Below are positions 3,737 through 58,100 of a stretch of 64,000 bases of DNA, piece by piece. Both the position numbers and the translations under genes were made by a program. The notes under the pieces were generated by a model. That model made no database searches and was not told where the DNA came from. It saw only the letters and a program-made list of their open reading frames with translations. The DNA comes from Octopus bimaculoides. Lineage: Eukaryota. The DNA is taken from positions 103,815,415 through 103,879,414 of the forward strand of contig NC_068984.1 in the NCBI RefSeq assembly GCF_001194135.2, given 5' to 3'. The stretch's first letter is position 1; every line of letters begins with the position of its first letter.

Positions 3737-4335
3737 NNNNNNNNNNNNNNNNNNNNNNNNNNNNNNNNNNNNNNNNNNNNNNNNNNNNNNNNNNNNNNNN
3801 NNNNNNNNNNNNNNNNNNNNNNNNNNNNNNNNNNNNNNNNNNNNNNNNNNNNNNNNNNNNNNNNNNNNNNNNNNNNNNNNNNNNNNNNNNNNNNNNNNNN
3901 NNNNNNNNNNNNNNNNNNNNNNNNNNNNNNNNNNNNNNNNNNNNNNNNNNNNNNNNNNNNNNNNNNNNNNNNNNNNNNNNNNNNNNNNNNNNNNNNNNNN
4001 NNNNNNNNNNNNNNNNNNNNNNNNNNNNNNNNNNNNNNNNNNNNNNNNNNNNNNNNNNNNNNNNNNNNNNNNNNNNNNNNNNNNNNNNNNNNNNNNNNNN
4101 NNNNNNNNNNNNNNNNNNNNNNNNNNNNNNNNNNNNNNNNNNNNNNNNNNNNNNNNNNNNNNNNNNNNNNNNNNNNNNNNNNNNNNNNNNNNNNNNNNNN
4201 NNNNNNNNNNNNNNNNNNNNNNNNNNNNNNNNNNNNNNNNNNNNNNNNNNNNNNNNNNNNNNNNNNNNNNNNNNNNNNNNNNNNNNNNNNNNNNNNNNNN
4301 NNNNNNNNNNNNNNNNNNNNNNNNNNNNNNNNNNN
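3737..4335. other. Assembly gap (N run)
   Basis: Ns; ORF calls spanning it are artefacts. Confidence 1.
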
Positions 4336-4571
4336 GCTTCTCACATGGACAACCGTATGTTGGCTGCTCAAGAGTGGGCAGCAACAAAAAACCTATTTGT
4401 ATATGCTCCACAAGGGAAAACAAGGAACATAGTTTACAATGAGGTGTTATAATCACAACAGCAAGAAAGTATGTACATGATCACCTTCTTTTACGAAACT
4501 TCATTGACTTTCATATATTTATATTGATATACATATATATACGTGTGTTTGGGTGCGTGTGTGTATATACA

Positions 4572-8959: not shown

Positions 8960-9500
8960 GTTGCCTCCTCTTTTCGAGTCCGTCCAACTGTTCATTTAGG
9001 GTCTCAATTGTCGAGAACCGTACTTTTCTGTTTGCTTTAAATTCAGGTTTTCACTTACTTGGAAATAGGCTTCCGTCTTTCTACATAGACCTAAATGCAC
9101 TGATAACACTTGCGGGAGTATTTTTTTCAATTTTTTCTTTAGTTCTTTCGAAGACTTGTTTTTAACGAGACAAACATTTATGTTATTGCAATAAAGATTT
9201 ATGGGGGGAGGTACCATAAATCGAATAGTTCTAACCAATCTGTGCCAGATTAATTGTATTATCCACAACAAATAATTTTGCTTCACATGTCTCTCCTTGA
9301 AATGTGATGTCGATACGTTTTGCCCATAGAATGTAATTTATCGCCCGTTACACCACGCGCTATTTTCGCTGCTTTACGTAATCTCGGTTTACCAATTTTT
9401 TCCCAAGTAACCGCATTTATAATCAAGATGTCACTACCTGTGTCTGACTGTAATTTGGTATTCACATTATTTACTGTCACTATATATTGTCCAATATGGT
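8960..9500 (-). mobile_element. Ty3/Gypsy pol remnant: aspartic protease and start of RT
   Basis: Translation VTVNNVNTKLQSDTGSDILIINAVTWEKIGKPRL (DTG motif at 9430-9444), then ELKKKLKKILPQVLSVHLGLCRKTEAYFQVSEN...NEQLDGLEKRG; contains frameshifts and stops. Confidence 0.75.
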
Positions 9501-9524
9501 TGTGTTTTTTTTTTTTTAAGATAT

Positions 9525-9672
9525 TAAAGATCAGGTTGCTATATCTAGCATGTTGAGCAACCACATTGAGAGGCAACGAGCTGGCAGAATCGTTAGCATG
9601 CCAGGCAAAATGTTTAGCAGCGTTTCGTCCGTCCTTATGTTCTGAGTTTAAATTCTGCCGAGAACGACTTTC
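9525..9672 (+). mobile_element. tRNA-derived SINE family B (partial)
   Basis: gagctggcagaatcgttagc...ttctgagtttaaattctgccgag; A/B-box-like motifs; many copies in the window. Confidence 0.7.
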
Positions 9673-9904
9673 CGTTGCAATCACTCTTCATTGAAAACAC
9701 ATTAGAACTTTTTGTTTGAGCCTCGTAGTCTTGTTCTACAATGAGAACTCCTATCCCAGCTTCTAACAACGTTAGCACTTTTTGTTTTTAAACGGACAAT
9801 CCTTTTTATAGTATAGGCCTCCACTATCATAACACGGATTGAATTTTTGCAGATATTTATCCCCCTAAGGGATCTGTAGGAGACTTCCGACGTCTTAATT
9901 CCAT

Positions 9905-23543: not shown

Positions 23544-24045
23544 TACAATAATATATATTCTATTTATATATTTATGTATATAAATATGTAAAACACACAT
23601 TACCACGTGCAAAATATATACATAATATATATTATTTATACATTATATATATATATATATATATATATACATACATACTCACAAATATATATATTGTCTA
23701 CACATTTTACCTATATACATAATCATATATATATATACATTGTCTATACATTTTATCTATATACATACATATATTGTCTATACAGTTTATCTATAGACAT
23801 ACATATATATACACATACATATATAGTCTACACATTTTATCTATATACATATAATCATATATATATATACATATAGTTGTCTGTACTATTCTATTATCTT
23901 GACACTCTATGTATTTAATATATATAATTGTTATATACCATATGCCCACACACACAATGGACATATATATATATATATATATATAGCCTTTATATGATTC
24001 ATTTATATAAACACATCCATATTATCTCTCTCTCTCTCTCTCTCG
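23200..24045. repeat. (TA)/(CA) low-complexity block with a 4-copy minisatellite core (TCTAYACATTTTATCTATATACATA) at ~23695-23870
   Basis: Visible repeats. Confidence 0.85.
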
Positions 24046-29189: not shown

Positions 29190-31031
29190 CTAAATACCTT
29201 CATGAAAGAATTGTGTTGCAAGAATATCCCCAGTGACAATTGTCTGGCACGATGCATCAATTTGCTTTGTACAGCAATTATTATTGTTACCATTAGTTTG
29301 TTCGTTGCTCAAGTCAACATCAGCACCGTATTTATCAGCAGATTGCCCATTTAACATATCTCCATTCTCAAGTATTGTATTGGTGTTGCTGCTCAGTCCA
29401 TTCATGAAAGGTTCTTTTTCACCATTATGGCATCTGGAATCACGAGGACTGTCGCCAAGAACAGACTGATTCATATAATATCGTTCAGCTACCATAGAAG
29501 GATTCTGTGCATCACCACCAGCCTCATCACTTAGATCAAGATCATCTATGTCTTTCATTCCTTCTAATTCCACAGATTTGAAGTTCCAAACTGGCACTAC
29601 ACCGGCACCACTAGGCGCTGCATCAAAGAAAGCATACCTCAAACCTCCCACAGTGACTGGTGAATTGAGGATGTTGTTGTCGTTTAAGTCAGGAATTACT
29701 TTCTTCAGTTCATCGTCTATGTTGCCGAGAGGAGTGCCAGGATCTCTGGATCTTCCATCCAAAGGCAAATGGAGTCTTTCAGCAAGACGGTCAATCATAT
29801 CTTCAATAGATTCGTTTTCCTTCCATACTCGAGTGGCACGCCACCTAGCTCGACTGCCCTTTGGAGCTGGGATAGCATCAAAGCAAACAGTTTCACCAAC
29901 AGACAAAAGTCTATTCAAATCATCTATATGGCGGCCAAAGATGCAACGGTCAATAAAAACATGTTCATGCCTTCCTAAATCAATGATACCCCAAAGTTTA
30001 GCAACATGATATATCTTCCCTTTTCTATTGGTAATCGTTGGTTTATTTGGACATGCTGGTTTACTGCCAGTGATTACAACATTTAATCGAGTATTTTTAA
30101 TCACTGACACCGTCTCATCTTCAGATATTGCAAAGATGTTTGAGTGCTGCCTCAAGAATTTTTCCAGTTCAGTTTTACTCCATCCAATTGTATTCCTCAA
30201 ACTCTCTGGTGCTTGACTAAAATGGCCACTAAGACTGTTAAGCTTTATGTCACCTTTCTTCTCAATAATATTTTTCAGAAACATAACAGCTTTGTATTCA
30301 TTAGCAGTCATTGTCATAGGCCCAGACTTGGAACTCAATATGCCAGGTGACTTCAATGGCTTGGCATCCATTATATTTAAGCTGCGAGGTCTATTTTTTA
30401 ATTTAGGTGTCAATGGCATAGAAAGCATACCAGGGTCCCCTGCAAACTGTCTACCGTCATCATCAGTCTGGTCTGATTCTGACTTTAAGGGACTACAAGC
30501 CATATTGTCCTTAAGACAAACAATATCCCCTTTCACTTCAAAAATTAAAGGATGTTTATGCAACCAGTCTTCAAATTCATTCTGTGGACCAACACACTCA
30601 CGGATTTCTGCAGAAGCCTGAGATAGATGACCAGCTAGACTTTTGGTAGCCATCCATTTTTCGCCCTTTTTAAGAAATTTGCTACGAAAATATTGAACAG
30701 CTTCTGTTTCAATGGATACTTCAGGAAGACTGAAACTTGAGGAAGATGATGCTGGACTACTATCACGAACATTGTTATTTACTGAACTACTCCAACAAGT
30801 GCCATCTGTTAAACATACAAGATTACCATTTACAGTGAAAAGAGAAGGATATTTAAGCAGGAATTTTTTTAACCCAGCCTCATTGCCACCTGCAGCATGC
30901 CGCATTTCAGATGTAAAATTTCGACTGCCAAAGCGACCAGCCAACTGGCTAATACTGAGTGGTGAAGGGCTATGGTTCATCAACACCTCAAGGAAATATA
31001 ACATAGCTTTGTGACCTGGATCCTCCGCCAT
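29190..31031 (-). CDS. Egalitarian-type winged-helix (LOTUS-like) x3 plus cold-shock/OB-fold RNA-binding protein (Egl/LIN-66-like architecture), 613 aa
   Basis: Uninterrupted 1842-nt ORF, strong start context (AAAATAATGG). Three internal repeats at aa ~7-74, 108-173 and 245-311 (AxxYFL/FL...LAG.F/LS...L.KFL..HP.+F.V.G..V.L). Repeat 1 resembles, from memory, the Drosophila Egl N-terminus (IAGGSQSGLKKFLAQYPAIF vs AAGGNEAGLKKFLLKYPSLF). CSD-like aa ~335-404 (KGKIYHV, KLWGII, EHVFID, LSVGETVCF, RATRV). C-terminal IDASCQT. Confidence 0.9.
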   Translation of the reverse strand: MAEDPGHKAMLYFLEVLMNHSPSPLSISQLAGRFGSRNFTSEMRHAAGGNEAGLKKFLLKYPSLFTVNGNLVCLTDGTCWSSSVNNNVRDSSPASSSSSFSLPEVSIETEAVQYFRSKFLKKGEKWMATKSLAGHLSQASAEIRECVGPQNEFEDWLHKHPLIFEVKGDIVCLKDNMACSPLKSESDQTDDDGRQFAGDPGMLSMPLTPKLKNRPRSLNIMDAKPLKSPGILSSKSGPMTMTANEYKAVMFLKNIIEKKGDIKLNSLSGHFSQAPESLRNTIGWSKTELEKFLRQHSNIFAISEDETVSVIKNTRLNVVITGSKPACPNKPTITNRKGKIYHVAKLWGIIDLGRHEHVFIDRCIFGRHIDDLNRLLSVGETVCFDAIPAPKGSRARWRATRVWKENESIEDMIDRLAERLHLPLDGRSRDPGTPLGNIDDELKKVIPDLNDNNILNSPVTVGGLRYAFFDAAPSGAGVVPVWNFKSVELEGMKDIDDLDLSDEAGGDAQNPSMVAERYYMNQSVLGDSPRDSRCHNGEKEPFMNGLSSNTNTILENGDMLNGQSADKYGADVDLSNEQTNGNNNNCCTKQIDASCQTIVTGDILATQFFHEGI

Positions 31032-31089
31032 TATTTTAGGTTGGTAAGAGCCAAATGAGGAATCAAGATAAGTGTCTTGAAAAGAATCC

Positions 31090-31115
31090 CTAAAAATAGA
31101 AAAATAAAATTATAT
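31090..31115 (-). promoter_or_regulatory. Splice acceptor 58 nt upstream of the ATG (5' UTR intron)
   Basis: Minus strand ATAATTTTATTTTTCTATTTTTAG|GGATTC, with AG at 31091-31090. Confidence 0.7.
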
Positions 31116-46713: not shown

Positions 46714-47639
46714 ACAAAACTGATTGTGTCAATCCCATTTCGTGTGTATCGAGGTAGAGAATACAAACAATGTGTGTGTGTGTGTGTACACACAGCCAAC
46801 TGCGACCTAGTAGTCCGATGAACTATCTATCCTACAGAGAGCTGCATTACATTTTACTTTTTGTAATTAGGGGTGTGTGTTGGTGAGAGAATGTTTGTTG
46901 GTGAGACTATGTGCATGTGTATGGATGGAAGAGTGCGTCAAAATAAAGAGGTGTCACTGTGTGTAATATTGTCAGCATGTGGATTGCTGCAAGTGAAGAA
47001 GACTAAGGAATGGTAACATTCTACAAAAGTATTAAGAACCAATAAAATAAGCAGGACGAAAAACGATATAAATAGTATGAATTGCTACGGCTAAAGAAAT
47101 CTTAAACTTTTTCATATACATTTATTATACAATAAATTATGATTTAAAAAAAAATTAAACCGTGAATATAATGAATAAGAAATAAACAAATGGGGCAGCT
47201 GGTTGATTTACAAATGTTGAAGTTGAAGTAATAATAAAGTCAATGTCAAAAAACACACATCCAAGTGTGACAGACATTCGTCTGCATTTCCAATGTTAGT
47301 ATCATAGAAGTTAAAGGTAAAACAAAAACAAAACTTAGGAATAAGAAAGAAGAAATGAGAAATACAAAACTTAACAGCCATACATTGTTTATCGACTGTT
47401 CAATAAATTCACTGTCTCCAATATCAGCACACACTTAAACATACAGATATAAATAGATATATATACACATTAGGATATATATATATATTTTGATCTTCGT
47501 GTAGTCGCACCAAGTTTGTGTGTTTTGTTATGAAGTATGAAATAAAGACAAAACCAAACAGAGCTGATATACGTTCAATTATGAGTGTACGCACGTGTTG
47601 GACCCACCTTTTTATAACAAATGTATACGAATAAAGTAC

Positions 47640-54044: not shown

Positions 54045-54373
54045 NNNNNNNNNNNNNNNNNNNNNNNNNNNNNNNNNNNNNNNNNNNNNNNNNNNNNNNN
54101 NNNNNNNNNNNNNNNNNNNNNNNNNNNNNNNNNNNNNNNNNNNNNNNNNNNNNNNNNNNNNNNNNNNNNNNNNNNNNNNNNNNNNNNNNNNNNNNNNNNN
54201 NNNNNNNNNNNNNNNNNNNNNNNNNNNNNNNNNNNNNNNNNNNNNNNNNNNNNNNNNNNNNNNNNNNNNNNNNNNNNNNNNNNNNNNNNNNNNNNNNNNN
54301 NNNNNNNNNNNNNNNNNNNNNNNNNNNNNNNNNNNNNNNNNNNNNNNNNNNNNNNNNNNNNNNNNNNNNNNNN
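54045..54373. other. Assembly gap (N run)
   Basis: Ns. Confidence 1.
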
Positions 54374-55204
54374 TATATATATGTACACACCCAACAAGAT
54401 TCTACACACCTTCTGTCTACCAAATTCACTCACAAAGCATTAATCGACTTGGGGCTAAGAAGAAGGTGCTTGTCCAAGGTGTTGCACTATGAGACTGAAC
54501 CCAAAACCACATGAGCTCAAATTGGAAATACATATATCATTTGAATTTCTTTTTAAAAAATCACAAAGTTTCCATTTCTCTTCCCTGAATTAGTAAATAC
54601 TTGTGTAACTTTCAAAAGGCCATCTCATCATTTTTGCTGTTGATTTTGCTTTTGTTTGTTTTGTTTTTCTTCACTGATTTGGTGAATCTCAGATTATATA
54701 ATCTAATGTGTCTTTCCTTCTTTAAAATGGTAGAGTTTAATTTAAATAAGATTTGGCTGCTATTTTCTAGCAGGCTGAGCAACCACATGAAGGAATCTTT
54801 GTTGGCTGTTATATTTTCATGAAGGTAAGGGTAGTGACAACTGTAGCCTCCATAGTTAGGGGTTGCTCTTTGGTAAGGCATAGCACCTGTTCAACCATCC
54901 TGCCTGGGATACGATGAAGACATGGGACTGCAGCATGGAGGATTGTAAAGAGGTAGCAGAAGAGGTCAACTGAGCCAATAGTGCTTCTTATATTGATTCT
55001 GAGTGGGGGAATCCTAGAAGATCCACAGTCAGGATCACCAAGCTCTATCAAGAAAGTAACAGCAACACATCCATAGGGGAGGCGTCCATGGCTGTGTAAT
55101 CAGTTAATGAAAGATTCATTGCAACTCAAGCTACAAATTCAAATAGAATTGGGTGGTGACAGAGAGTCACGGGAATCTGTACAACCAGCACAACTGAATA
55201 ATAA

Positions 55205-57852: not shown

Positions 57853-58100
57853 CTCTCACATTTCCCTGCCTTCTCTTCTTGCTCACTTTCCCTCCTCTTT
57901 TCACTTCACTGTGTCCCTATCATTTTTCTCACCCCTCCTTAATTCTTCTGTCCCTCTGCCTCTACCGGTGTTTGGCCAAGCCTGCTCTCACATTTCCCTA
58001 CCTTCTCTTCTTGCTCACTCTCCCTCCTCTTTTCACTTCACTGTGTCCCTGTCATTTTTCTCGCCCCTCCTTAATTCTTCTGTCCCTCTGCTTCTACCTC
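57853..58100. repeat. 132-bp tandem duplication in a pyrimidine-rich repeat
   Basis: ctctcacatttccct...ctgtccctctgc.tctacc starts at 57853 and again at 57985. Confidence 0.9.

What the first reader, a model, noticed from the sequence alone, without database searches (positions are those of the whole stretch)
29190..31031. Egalitarian-like protein with the exonuclease domain replaced by a cold-shock domain
Seen: three ~65-aa internal repeats, an OB/CSD-like segment with RNP1/RNP2-like motifs (LWGII, HVFID), an acidic disordered tail, and no DEDD 3'-5' exonuclease motifs. Known: Drosophila Egl couples mRNAs to BicD-dynein using N-terminal winged-helix repeats plus an EXD-type exonuclease-like domain, and nematode LIN-66 is a cold-shock-domain translational regulator. 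Inference: this is a second, probably uncharacterised Egl paralogue, a candidate mRNA-transport or translation adaptor with different RNA specificity. That is of interest in animals with very long axons and local translation.
Basis: partly seen in the sequence, partly recalled or inferred. Interest (0 to 1): 0.8.

Follow-up and report, generated by a model that had tools for sequence, protein, structure and literature searches.

The report
Octopus Egalitarian-like protein with cold-shock-type domain
This octopus gene belongs to the Egalitarian-like family found in molluscs, worms and flatworms and first described in planarians in 2025: it keeps the fly mRNA-transport adaptor's three N-terminal winged-helix domains and its dynein-light-chain motif, but has a small cold-shock-type RNA-binding barrel where the fly protein has an exonuclease-like domain.

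Summary
Window 29190-31031 (-) is one 613-codon ORF under strong purifying selection. It encodes three Egalitarian winged-helix domains (Pfam WH_Egal, E=2e-68) and a confidently predicted five-stranded OB barrel (aa 333-404). The barrel's profile hits almost only cold-shock domains in the PDB (Unr/CSDE1, YB-1, YBX2, Csp). After it come an acidic disordered tail and a C-terminal CQTIVTGDI motif that matches the fly Egl dynein-light-chain site. There is no exonuclease domain.

This is not an uncharacterised second paralogue. It is the octopus member of the Spiralia-wide Egalitarian-like family: 60-67% identical in other molluscs, 33-39% to planarian Egal-1/2/3. That architecture, including a conserved "central region", was published in 2025 (PMC12579938), with an RNAi phenotype for planarian egal-1. 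That paper did not name the fold. Reading the central region as a CSD-type OB appears to be a modest new annotation.

Among 300 relatives, exonuclease and OB never co-occur. Every exonuclease form I could name is arthropod or nematode; OB forms are spiralian, plus one priapulid. No canonical Egl was found in molluscs.

The likely function is a BicD/LC8-dynein-linked RNA adaptor. This is inferred, not shown.

The parts
29190..31031 (-). Coding sequence of the 613-aa Egalitarian-like protein. The conserved start is MAEDPGHK and the stop is TAG at 29190-29192.
   Evidence: It is identical to the last 613 aa of Octopus sinensis LOC115210757 except for A326T. Against O. sinensis the CDS has 9 synonymous and 1 non-synonymous differences, while the flanks are 90-96% identical.
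31032..31091 (-). In-frame 5' extension of the same exon used by RefSeq isoform X1 (19 codons plus the G of a split ATG), with the splice acceptor AG at 31091-31090.
   Evidence: One search shows the sequence tttttag|GGATTCTTT. One search gives the P0001 N-terminus, MDSFQDTYLDSSFGSYQPKI.
47378..47385 (-). End of the upstream exon: 'AT' of the isoform-X1 start codon (47385-47384) followed by the splice donor GTATGG. The intron is about 16.3 kb.
   Evidence: The O. sinensis gene call starts ATGTATGAC, and that sequence is found once in the window, at 47365-47385 (-).
30804..31019 (-). ED1, the first Egl-type winged helix-turn-helix domain (aa 5-76). It corresponds to the BicD- and RNA-binding ED1 of fly Egl.
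   Evidence: Pfam WH_Egal. Fly Egl in PDB 9rvy aligns over aa 8-181 at E=6e-21. Foldseek against the Egl-BicD cryo-EM chains gives E=1e-11. pLDDT is above 90. The spiralian ED1 HMM scores 64-67 bits on arthropod Egl ED1.
30507..30719 (-). ED2, the second winged-helix domain (aa 105-175). It carries invariant S137-Q138, which align with the fly base-contacting residues S127-Q128.
30096..30320 (-). ED3, the third winged-helix domain (aa 238-312).
29820..30035 (-). Cold-shock-type OB barrel (aa 333-404), the most conserved part of the family. The core GKIYHVAKLWGIIDLGRHEHVFID has nearly every residue from H342 to F359 invariant.
   Evidence: Conservation. AF2. Foldseek S1/CSD hits. The profile against PDB returns almost only CSDs (Unr CSD1 at E=1.2e-3, YBX2, YB-1, CSDE1, Csps). 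It equals the 'central region' of PMC12579938.
29775..29807 (-). Helix following the OB (aa 409-419, SIEDMIDRLAERL). It is conserved in molluscs only.
29262..29771 (-). Acidic, predicted-disordered tail (aa 421-590).
   Evidence: pLDDT is below 50 over most of it. It has 28 D+E against 13 K+R.
29580..29636 (-). Conserved linear motif FFDAAPSGAGVVPVWNF (aa 466-484) inside the disordered tail. Its partner is unknown.
   Evidence: D470 and S474 are invariant and W482 and N483 are nearly invariant. The MID HMM hits at E=2e-24. The motif was not detected in flatworm, priapulid or arthropod relatives.
29223..29249 (-). C-terminal CQTIVTGDI motif (aa 595-603). It is homologous to the fly Egl dynein-light-chain (LC8) binding site.
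   Evidence: It aligns to fly Egl 957-981. Q596, T597 and T600 are invariant. The motif [SCT]QTxSTG[DE]I is shared with scorpion, wasp, centipede, nematode, priapulid and flatworm relatives. PMC12579938 reports 75% identity between the planarian and fly motifs.

Best explanation
The gene encodes the octopus orthologue of the spiralian Egalitarian-like (Egal) family.

The protein has the same ends as Drosophila Egl. [quoted passage not shown] At the very C-terminus is an LC8/dynein-light-chain motif. The fly's ExoHD-XAD RNA-binding module is absent. In its position sits one cold-shock-type OB barrel, closest in sequence to Unr/CSDE1 and Y-box CSDs.

Most likely mechanism (inferred): the protein dimerises on LC8 through the C-terminal motif and docks on the BicD C-terminal coiled coil through ED1. 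It holds cargo RNA with ED1/ED2, which would read the minor groove of structured RNA as in the fly, and with the CSD, which would bind single-stranded RNA on its RNP1/RNP2 face. This would couple particular mRNAs to dynein-driven, microtubule-based transport or to local translational control, with an RNA specificity different from fly Egl.

Shown here: the domain content, family membership, purifying selection, and conservation of the motifs.
Inferred: RNA binding, BicD and LC8 binding, and transport.
For: Family membership:
- 60-67% identity to other molluscan proteins and 40-50% to annelid, nemertean and brachiopod proteins over the full length.
- 35%, 39% and 33% identity to planarian Egal-1, -2 and -3, with E down to 5e-82 and the same core motif GK.YH..KLWGI.DLG.HEHVF.

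Egl relationship:
- WH_Egal matches three times at E=2e-68.
- Fly Egl in the PDB aligns at E=6e-21 and 32-35% identity over ED1-ED2.
- Arthropod and nematode Egl ED1 and ED2 are each best matched by the spiralian ED1 and ED2 HMMs respectively.
- The fly ED2 base-contacting residues S127 and Q128 align with S137 and Q138, which are invariant in the family.
- The C-terminal [SC]QTxSTGD motif is shared with Egl. In the fly it is the Dlc-binding site.

CSD:
- AF2 predicts a five-stranded barrel with pLDDT about 90.
- Foldseek hits are exclusively S1/CSD OB folds, with target-normalised TM of 0.6-0.69 to 66-aa Csps.
- The profile hits 25 PDB sequences at E<=10, of which 22 are CSDs. The best are Unr CSD1 at 1.2e-3 and YBX2/YB-1 at 3-4e-3.
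- W347 aligns with the first RNP1 aromatic residue and F359 with the RNP2 Phe.

Functional gene: 9 synonymous against 1 non-synonymous difference from O. sinensis, with flanks 4-10% diverged.

Microtubule link: planarian egal-1 RNAi and microtubule poisons give the same regeneration-polarity defect (PMC12579938).
Against: - No experiment shows RNA, BicD or LC8 binding for any member of the spiralian family. The planarian authors call the biochemical function unclear.
[quoted passage not shown] Losing it could therefore mean a quite different cargo or function.
- The fly ED1 base-contacting residues H31 and C35 are S28 and G32 here.
- The CSD is divergent. Pfam CSD and S1 models do not hit it. 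The second RNP1 aromatic residue and the RNP2 His are I349 and D361.
- Foldseek E-values are modest, at 1.8e-3 or weaker. The top structural hit is the DBC1 S1-like domain, described in that PDB entry in a protein-protein context.
- hhalign against a single CspB sequence gives only 16% probability.
Confidence: 0.6

Rival explanations
1. It is a plain Egl orthologue whose exonuclease-homology domain has simply diverged beyond recognition, so there was no domain swap.
For: The planarian paper left this open: 16.9% identity in the region, with 'common ancestry cannot be clearly determined'. The position between ED3 and the C-terminal motif is the same as that of ExoHD.
Against: - The conserved folded unit is only about 70 aa and is predicted as an all-beta five-stranded barrel. 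ExoHD-XAD is an alpha/beta module of about 300 aa.
- An Egl ExoHD-XAD HMM hits none of 212 OB-bearing relatives, and OB and ExoHD never co-occur.
- The domain's profile finds CSDs in the PDB and no DEDD nucleases. Foldseek agrees.
Confidence: 0.03
2. It is a microtubule- or dynein-associated scaffold in which the OB acts as a protein-protein interaction module rather than an RNA-binding domain, and the EDs act like LOTUS domains that recruit a helicase or another protein.
For: - The best Foldseek match is the DBC1 S1-like domain, from a PDB entry on the DBC1/SIRT1 interaction.
- Two of the canonical RNP aromatic or His positions are lost.
- An invariant set of residues (H342, D351, H355-E356-H357, D361) is specific to the spiralian OB and absent from the priapulid and other OB copies. 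This is more conservation than generic RNA stacking needs.
- EDs resemble LOTUS domains.
Against: - Sequence-profile similarity is to bona fide RNA-binding CSDs: Unr, YB-1, YBX2 and Csps.
- The ED2 Ser-Gln pair that reads RNA bases in the fly is invariant here.
- OB copies in related proteins keep the canonical G-[FIL]-[IV] and V-[FY]-F motifs.
Confidence: 0.2
3. It is functionally a LIN-66/Unr-type cytoplasmic translational regulator (winged helix plus CSD plus disordered regions, acting in RNP granules), and dynein coupling is secondary or absent.
For: - The CSD is nearest to Unr/CSDE1.
- LIN-66 requires its CSD and has long disordered regions.
- The Pfam family PF26288 'WHD_lin-66' gives faint hits on this protein's EDs. 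This suggests that LIN-66 also combines a related winged helix with a CSD.
Against: - The LC8 motif and ED1/ED2 are strongly conserved with Egl.
- The planarian egal-1 phenotype is mimicked by microtubule depolymerisation.
The PF26288 hits are only 'faint'.
Confidence: 0.12
4. It is a processed retrogene or pseudogene without function, since the coding sequence lies in a single exon.
For: The whole conserved CDS lies in one exon.
Against: - The frame is intact. There are 9 synonymous and 1 non-synonymous changes against a species whose flanking DNA is 4-10% diverged.
- There is a 16-kb 5' intron with canonical GT..AG.
- Full-length orthologues occur across six or more phyla.
Confidence: 0.01

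Closest known systems
Planarian Egalitarian-like proteins Egal-1/2/3 (Schmidtea mediterranea; Development 2025, PMC12579938) and their mollusc, annelid and brachiopod homologues
   Same: Same full architecture: ED1-ED2-ED3, the Spiralia-conserved central region, and the C-terminal Dlc motif. Identity is 33-39% over about 380-400 aa, and the core GK.YH..KLWGI.DLG.HEHVF is nearly identical.
   Different: Octopus appears to have a single copy among the hits, whereas planarians have three paralogues. Molluscan, annelid and brachiopod members carry extra conserved tail motifs (aa 466-484 and 511-520) that were not detected in flatworms. The planarian paper did not assign a fold to the central region. 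Here it is read as a CSD-type OB.
Drosophila Egalitarian (Egl) and C. elegans EGAL-1
   Same: ED1 and ED2 correspond one-to-one at 32-35% identity. ED3 is present. The ED2 Ser-Gln RNA-contact pair is conserved. The C-terminal [SC]QTxSTGD dynein-light-chain motif is conserved.
   Different: There is no 3'-5' exonuclease-homology domain and no tetrahelical XAD, the module that completes the fly RNA pocket. A roughly 70-aa cold-shock-type OB is present instead. The fly ED1 residues H31 and C35 are S28 and G32 here.
Cold-shock domains of Unr/CSDE1 and Y-box proteins (YB-1, YBX2), and bacterial Csps
   Same: Five-stranded OB barrel. G-x9-G spacing as in Unr CSD1. The first RNP1 aromatic residue (W347) and the RNP2 Phe (F359) are retained. 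These are the only sequence-profile hits in the PDB apart from two S1 proteins and one ribosomal protein.
   Different: It falls below the Pfam CSD threshold. The second RNP1 aromatic residue is Ile and the RNP2 His is Asp. An invariant H-E-H is unique to the family. It is embedded after three wHTH domains rather than in CSD arrays.
C. elegans LIN-66
   Same: Both have a functionally required CSD plus long disordered regions. The Pfam family 'WHD_lin-66' faintly cross-hits this protein's winged helices.
   Different: LIN-66 is reported as nematode-specific, with no homologues found by BLAST. No Egl-like ED1/ED2 or LC8 motif is reported for it. Homology was not tested here.
Priapulus caudatus LOC106810559 and unnamed multi-ED/multi-OB proteins (P0285, P0204, P0172)
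   Same: Same three building blocks: WH_Egal domains, OB copies of the same sub-type (VGD.V.FDA...W.A..VW), and the C-terminal SQTxSTGDI motif.
   Different: They have several OB copies, and their EDs and OBs are far more divergent (18-38 bits against more than 100). They lack the HEH signature.

Membership tests
Spiralian Egalitarian-like (Egal) family | Three N-terminal Egl-type folded modules | tested here: met
   WH_Egal matches three times at E=2e-68. AF2 gives three wHTH units with pLDDT above 90. They align to planarian Egal-1/2/3.
Spiralian Egalitarian-like (Egal) family | Spiralia-conserved central region of about 70 aa, more than 50% identical across phyla | tested here: met
   The core GKIYHVAKLWGIIDLGRHEHVFID matches planarian GKVYHITKLWGIVDLGQHEHVFFD. 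H342 to F359 is nearly invariant in 59 sequences.
Spiralian Egalitarian-like (Egal) family | C-terminal dynein-light-chain-type motif | tested here: met
   CQTIVTGDI at aa 595-603. The CT HMM hits at E=3e-16, and Q596, T597 and T600 are invariant.
Egalitarian sensu stricto (fly Egl, nematode EGAL-1) | ED1-ED3 winged-helix domains, with ED1 and ED2 conserved | tested here: met
Egalitarian sensu stricto (fly Egl, nematode EGAL-1) | 3'-5' exonuclease-homology domain (DEDDy fold, PF01612) | tested here: not met
   There is no PF01612 hit at E<=10. The Egl ExoHD-XAD HMM gives no hit. Arthropod Egl controls hit PF01612 at 1e-25 to 1e-30.
Egalitarian sensu stricto (fly Egl, nematode EGAL-1) | Tetrahelical exonuclease-adjacent domain (XAD/EHD) | tested here: not met
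   Only one short helix (aa 409-419) follows the OB, and the rest is predicted disordered.
Egalitarian sensu stricto (fly Egl, nematode EGAL-1) | Binding to the BicD C-terminal coiled coil via ED1, and to Dlc/LC8 via the C-terminal motif | not testable with these tools
   Only sequence conservation of ED1 and of the motif could be shown.
Cold-shock domain (PF00313-type CSD) | Five-stranded antiparallel beta-barrel (OB fold) of about 70 aa | tested here: met
   AF2 strands lie at 333-343, 347-353, 356-361, 381-388 and 397-404 with pLDDT about 90. Foldseek finds CspB, YB-1 and Unr CSDs with target-normalised TM of 0.53-0.69. This is a prediction, not a solved structure.
Cold-shock domain (PF00313-type CSD) | RNP1 ([KR]-G-[FY]-G-F-I) and RNP2 (V-F-V-H) motifs | tested here: inconclusive
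   The motifs are aligned but partly degenerate. K-L-W-G-I-I keeps the first aromatic residue and the Gly. V-F-I-D keeps the Phe and loses the His.
Cold-shock domain (PF00313-type CSD) | Significant match to the curated family model | tested here: not met
   The Pfam scan gives no CSD or S1 hit even at E<=10. In the reverse direction, the family profile against PDB sequences gives CSDs at E=1e-3 to 1e-2.
LIN-66 | Sequence homology to the nematode LIN-66 CSD and structured region | not tested
The only lead is the faint precomputed PF26288 WHD_lin-66 hits.
LOTUS/OST-HTH domain proteins | Match to the OST-HTH (PF12872) model | tested here: not met
   There is no PF12872 hit on the octopus protein. 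The structural resemblance of EDs to LOTUS domains is reported by PMC13186709.
EXD1 | Exonuclease-like domain (PF01612) | tested here: not met
   The JGI labels 'exonuclease 3'-5' domain-containing protein 1' on some family members are not backed by any exonuclease domain hit (P0153).

The most novel reading that the evidence does not exclude
The combination of winged helices, cold-shock domain and LC8 motif is the ancestral protostome (possibly bilaterian) form of the Egalitarian family. Under this reading, the exonuclease-XAD module of fly and nematode Egl is a later substitution. The 'nematode-specific orphan' LIN-66 (a CSD plus a related winged helix) would be a divergent offshoot of the same family. 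Spiralian Egal-like proteins would then be BicD/dynein adaptors that read mRNAs through a composite double-stranded (ED1/ED2) plus single-stranded (CSD) code, giving a handle on mRNA localisation in spiral-cleaving embryos and cephalopod neurons.
Probability: 0.2. Interest if true: 0.6.

Novelty: new member of a known kind. Interest (0 to 1): 0.35.

Why it matters
Egl is the best-understood adaptor that selects mRNAs for dynein transport, and it has no clear vertebrate orthologue. Molluscs, annelids and flatworms keep its BicD-facing and LC8-facing ends but carry a cold-shock-type domain where the fly has its main RNA-binding module. That points to a natural module swap in an RNA-transport adaptor. 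It also gives a concrete, testable idea for the unnamed "central region" of planarian Egal-1, the protein needed for head-tail regeneration polarity. For octopus itself, this is a candidate for mRNA localisation in oocytes and long neurites. The gene family and its layout are already published, so the gain is an annotation and a hypothesis, not a discovery of a new kind.

Tried and rejected
- A Pfam scan of the C-terminal 215 aa alone found nothing at E<=10, so the OB had to be approached by structure and by reverse profile search.
- hhalign of the OB profile against a single CspB sequence gave E=1.6e-3 but only 16% probability. That is weak on its own.
- A search with the priapulid ED/OB protein returned only itself, so the taxa of the unnamed multi-ED/multi-OB proteins (P0204, P0172, P0206, P0209) stay unknown.
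- A search with the scallop exonuclease-only 'egalitarian protein homolog' returned only five bivalve proteins of about 260 aa, none with EDs. This is weak negative evidence for the absence of a canonical Egl in molluscs, because the search is limited by its word index.
- An apparent OB-like N-terminus in a sea-urchin ED-like+exonuclease protein from Table S3 of PMC12579938 was not significant (E=0.04 in a 12-sequence search). I dropped the idea that OB, ED and Exo co-occur in deuterostomes.
- The LIN-66 sequence could not be obtained from the papers' supplements, so that homology is untested.
- Rfam found no RNA family in the window.
- The other long ORFs in the window have no Pfam hits except a faint aspartyl-protease match.
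- The multi-frame ORFs at about 3.6-4.4 kb and 54.0-54.5 kb are artefacts of N-run assembly gaps.
- The retro-pseudogene reading was rejected on the substitution pattern and the 5' intron.
Full report
THE OBSERVATION

Window 29190..31031 on the minus strand is one uninterrupted ATG-to-stop frame of 613 codons, by far the longest ORF in the 64-kb window. At this base composition a codon is a stop with probability 0.075, so 613 stop-free codons have a chance of about 2e-21.

The protein equals the last 613 residues of Octopus sinensis LOC115210757 isoform X1 (633 aa), apart from A326T. The window is not that assembly. Non-coding DNA is 88-96% identical to O. sinensis chromosome CM016862.1, while the CDS is 99.46% identical, with nine synonymous differences and one non-synonymous. 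The gene is therefore under strong purifying selection.

The extra 20 residues in RefSeq come from the same exon, read from a splice acceptor at 31091-31090. The start codon is split across a 16.3-kb intron: 'AT' followed by the donor GTATGG at 47385-47378. Homologues in other phyla start at the equivalent of MAEDPGHK, so the 613-aa form is the conserved protein.

DOMAIN CONTENT

Pfam WH_Egal matches three stretches at E=2e-68. The three repeats are 30-35% identical to each other. AlphaFold2, run with a 59-sequence alignment, gives three winged helix-turn-helix units at aa 5-74, 107-173 and 239-310 with pLDDT above 90. Drosophila Egalitarian chains from the 2026 Egl-BicD-RNA cryo-EM entries are the only strong PDB matches, by sequence (E=6e-21 over aa 8-181) and by fold (E=1e-11, 32% identity).

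After ED3 comes a nearly invariant strand (LNVVITGS). Then at aa 333-404 there is a b1-b2-b3-(short helix)-b4-b5 unit with pLDDT about 90, followed by one helix at aa 409-419. The rest, aa 421-590, is predicted disordered and acidic, with 28 D+E against 13 K+R. It contains two conserved linear motifs (aa 466-484 and 511-520). The last 20 residues form a hairpin of moderate confidence.

No exonuclease domain is present. PF01612 does not hit. An HMM built from arthropod Egl ExoHD-XAD does not hit. The same tools find the domain easily in arthropod Egl.

IS THE OB A COLD-SHOCK DOMAIN?

Foldseek with the full model lists Egl first and then only S1/CSD OB folds. With the domain-only model (pLDDT 82.7, pTM 0.70), the hits are the DBC1 S1-like domain, ribosomal protein bS1, NusA S1, YBX2 and YB-1 CSDs, Unr CSD1-2 and bacterial Csps. 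E-values are 2e-3 to 3e-2, and target-normalised TM is up to 0.69 for the 66-aa Csps.

More discriminating is a sequence profile of the domain, built from 21 sequences including divergent copies from related proteins (A3). Searched against all PDB sequences, it returns 25 hits at E<=10, of which 22 are cold-shock domains. The best are Drosophila Unr CSD1 (1.2e-3), YBX2 (3.2e-3), YB-1 (3.6e-3), and then human CSDE1 and the bacterial Csps. Only two S1 proteins trail at E above 1.

The first RNP1 aromatic residue (W347), the Gly, and the RNP2 Phe (F359) are kept. The second RNP1 aromatic residue is Ile, and the RNP2 His is Asp.

The Pfam CSD model itself does not reach the domain. hhalign against a single CspB sequence gives low probability. 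I therefore call it a divergent, Unr/Y-box-like cold-shock-type OB rather than a canonical CSD.

This is also the most conserved part of the protein. H342, V343, A344, K345, L346, W347, I349, D351, L352, G353, H355, E356, H357, V358, F359 and D361 are invariant across 59 sequences from several phyla.

WHAT FAMILY IS IT?

Full-length homologues of 570-630 aa occur in several spiralian groups:
- gastropods, bivalves and chitons, at about 55-63% identity;
- annelids, nemerteans and the brachiopod Lingula, at 40-50%;
- trematodes, cestodes and the rotifer relative Seison.

The literature search found that this family was described in October 2025 (PMC12579938). Planarian dd_8302, named Egalitarian-like-1 (egal-1), and its paralogues egal-2 and egal-3 have:
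- an N-terminal region of three folded modules shared with Egl;
- a 67-71-aa "central region" more than 50% identical in molluscs, annelids and brachiopods;
- a C-terminal motif 75% identical to the fly Dlc-binding site.

Using the sequences in that paper's Table S3, the octopus protein is 35%, 39% and 33% identical to Egal-1, -2 and -3 (E down to 5e-82) and 67% identical to the oyster homologue. The planarian central region is the same OB core. The paper does not contain the terms cold shock, OB-fold or S1-like, so the fold assignment seems to be new, though I checked only that paper's main text. The family, its layout and one loss-of-function phenotype are not new.

RELATION TO EGL

- 212 have an OB and no ExoHD;
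- 39 have an ExoHD and no OB;
- none have both.

Every ExoHD-bearing protein I could name is an arthropod (scorpion, mite, centipede, wasp, beetle) or a nematode (Trichuris, Panagrolaimus, C. elegans). Every named single-OB protein is spiralian.

Arthropod and nematode ED1 and ED2 are each best matched by the spiralian ED1 and ED2 models, at 44-67 bits. The C-terminal motif [SCT]QTxSTG[DE]I is shared by all of them. So the two forms share both ends and differ in the middle.

Two points of the interpretation do not hold.

First, I found no spiralian protein combining EDs with an ExoHD. None appeared among the top 150 clusters of an exhaustive profile search over 1.84 billion representatives, nor among relatives of a scallop 261-aa exonuclease-only protein. 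That protein matches the Egl ExoHD HMM at 1e-46, and its only relatives are four other bivalve stand-alone exonucleases. The gene therefore looks like the spiralian counterpart of Egl, not a second paralogue. The evidence is negative and limited by sampling.

Second, the direction of change is open. Priapulus caudatus, an ecdysozoan, has a protein with three EDs, four OB copies of the same sub-type and the same C-terminal SQTVSTGDI. Several unnamed proteins have similar ED/OB arrays. ED+OB may therefore predate the ExoHD form.

MECHANISM

In the fly complex (PMC13186709):
- ED1 binds the BicD C-terminal coiled coil;
- ED1 and ED2 from two Egl chains insert helix 2 into adjacent RNA minor grooves;
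- ExoHD-XAD closes the pocket;
- the C-terminal site binds dynein light chain.

The ED2 residues that hydrogen-bond to bases, S127 and Q128, align with S137 and Q138, which are invariant in the spiralian family. The ED1 residues H31 and C35 align with S28 and G32. The LC8-type motif is conserved, including the positions of the fly Ser residues within ESQTLSTGD.

My best reading is an LC8-dimerised, BicD-docking RNA adaptor. ED1/ED2 would hold structured RNA, and the CSD would add a single-strand-binding surface in place of ExoHD-XAD, so the cargo code should differ from the fly's. Only the sequence and fold features are shown here. Binding to RNA, BicD and LC8 is inferred by homology. The planarian authors state that the biochemical function is unknown.

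The main rival is that the OB is a protein-interaction module. The top structural hit is the DBC1 S1-like domain. Two RNP positions are lost. A family-specific invariant H...HEH/D set is absent from the priapulid and other OB copies.

A LIN-66-like translational role is a further possibility. LIN-66 needs its CSD. A Pfam family called WHD_lin-66 gives faint hits on this protein's winged helices. However, I could not obtain the LIN-66 sequence to test homology.

VERDICT

The gene is a new member (the octopus orthologue) of a family already described in 2025, with one member functionally characterised. The incremental findings are:
- the cold-shock-type identity of the "central region";
- the strict mutual exclusivity and phyletic split of the OB and ExoHD forms;
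- the priapulid ED/OB/LC8-motif relative;
- a possible link to LIN-66.

Interest is moderate to low for the gene as such. It would be higher only if the deep-homology and composite RNA-code reading proves true.

Noticed in passing
window 29580-29636 and 29472-29501 (aa 466-484 FFDAAPSGAGVVPVWNF; aa 511-520 MVAERYYMNQ): Two short motifs inside the predicted-disordered acidic tail are conserved across molluscs, annelids and brachiopods (D470 and S474 invariant; W482, N483 and E516 nearly so). They were not detected in flatworm, priapulid or arthropod relatives. They look like docking motifs for an unknown partner.
   Followed up: partly
window 29820-30035 (aa H342, D351, H355-E356-H357, D361): A set of invariant His, Glu and Asp residues in the OB is specific to the spiralian single-OB proteins. 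The OB copies of the priapulid and other multi-OB relatives lack it and keep more canonical G-[FIL]-[IV] / V-[FY]-F motifs. It could be a special RNA-contact, metal or partner site.
   Followed up: partly
whole window compared with L001 (O. sinensis GCA_006345805.1, CM016862.1:85374489-85414369): The window is collinear with O. sinensis but only 88-96% identical in non-coding DNA, against 99.46% in the CDS. It comes from a closely related species or a divergent haplotype, not from that assembly.
   Followed up: partly
window about 3737-4400 and about 54046-54440: These are runs of N (assembly gaps) flanked by microsatellites, (GA)n and (TATC)n/(TA)n. They create spurious stop-free 'ORFs' in several frames on both strands.
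   Followed up: yes
P0319-P0323 (bivalve proteins of 251-264 aa; not in the window): Scallops and pearl oysters have stand-alone exonuclease proteins that NCBI names 'egalitarian protein homolog'. The scallop one matches an Egl ExoHD HMM at 1e-46, better than mouse EXD1 at 1e-24, and none has EDs. The Egl-type exonuclease may exist as a separate gene in some molluscs. No octopus counterpart appeared in a search limited by its word index.
   Followed up: partly
P0285/P0188 (Priapulus caudatus LOC106810559); P0204, P0172, P0206, P0209 (taxa unknown): These are larger relatives with arrays of WH_Egal domains and one to five OB copies, several ending in the same SQTxSTGDI motif. Pfam DUF7930 (PF25558) and S1-like (PF14444) hit some of these OB copies, so Pfam already covers part of this OB family under other names.
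   Followed up: partly
P0169, P0233, P0252 (Branchiostoma belcheri for the first two; P0252 unnamed): Amphioxus proteins have up to nine WH_Egal domains and no detectable OB or exonuclease domain. One gene model continues into an AAA ATPase region. ED arrays therefore exist in a chordate, although the planarian paper found no clear deuterostome homologue.
   Followed up: no
annotation of the octopus protein (PF26288): The Pfam family PF26288 is called WHD_lin-66 and gives faint hits on the EDs of this and several other family members. It hints that nematode LIN-66, published as having no homologues outside nematodes, combines a related winged helix with its CSD.
   Followed up: no
window 29190-29200: The stop codon sits in GAAG|GTATTTAG, which also reads as a plausible 5' splice donor (AAG|GTATTT). 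An alternative isoform could skip the last two residues and the stop. I did not check this against transcripts.
   Followed up: no
window 9283-9684 (-), inside the GC-richer stretch at about 8-14 kb: A 133-aa ORF has a faint Asp_protease_2 match (E=0.006, below the Pfam cut-off). It is possibly a decayed retroelement fragment.
   Followed up: no
window 57853-58098 and 23685-23851: Two short tandem duplications: a 132-nt unit at 1.9 copies and 95% identity, and an 80-nt unit at 2 copies and 84% identity. They have no evident link to the gene.
   Followed up: no
one search hit list: After two Octopus clusters (100% and 94%), identity drops straight to about 63% (gastropods and bivalves). No hit has the intermediate identity expected for squid or cuttlefish orthologues. 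This may be database coverage rather than biology.
   Followed up: no
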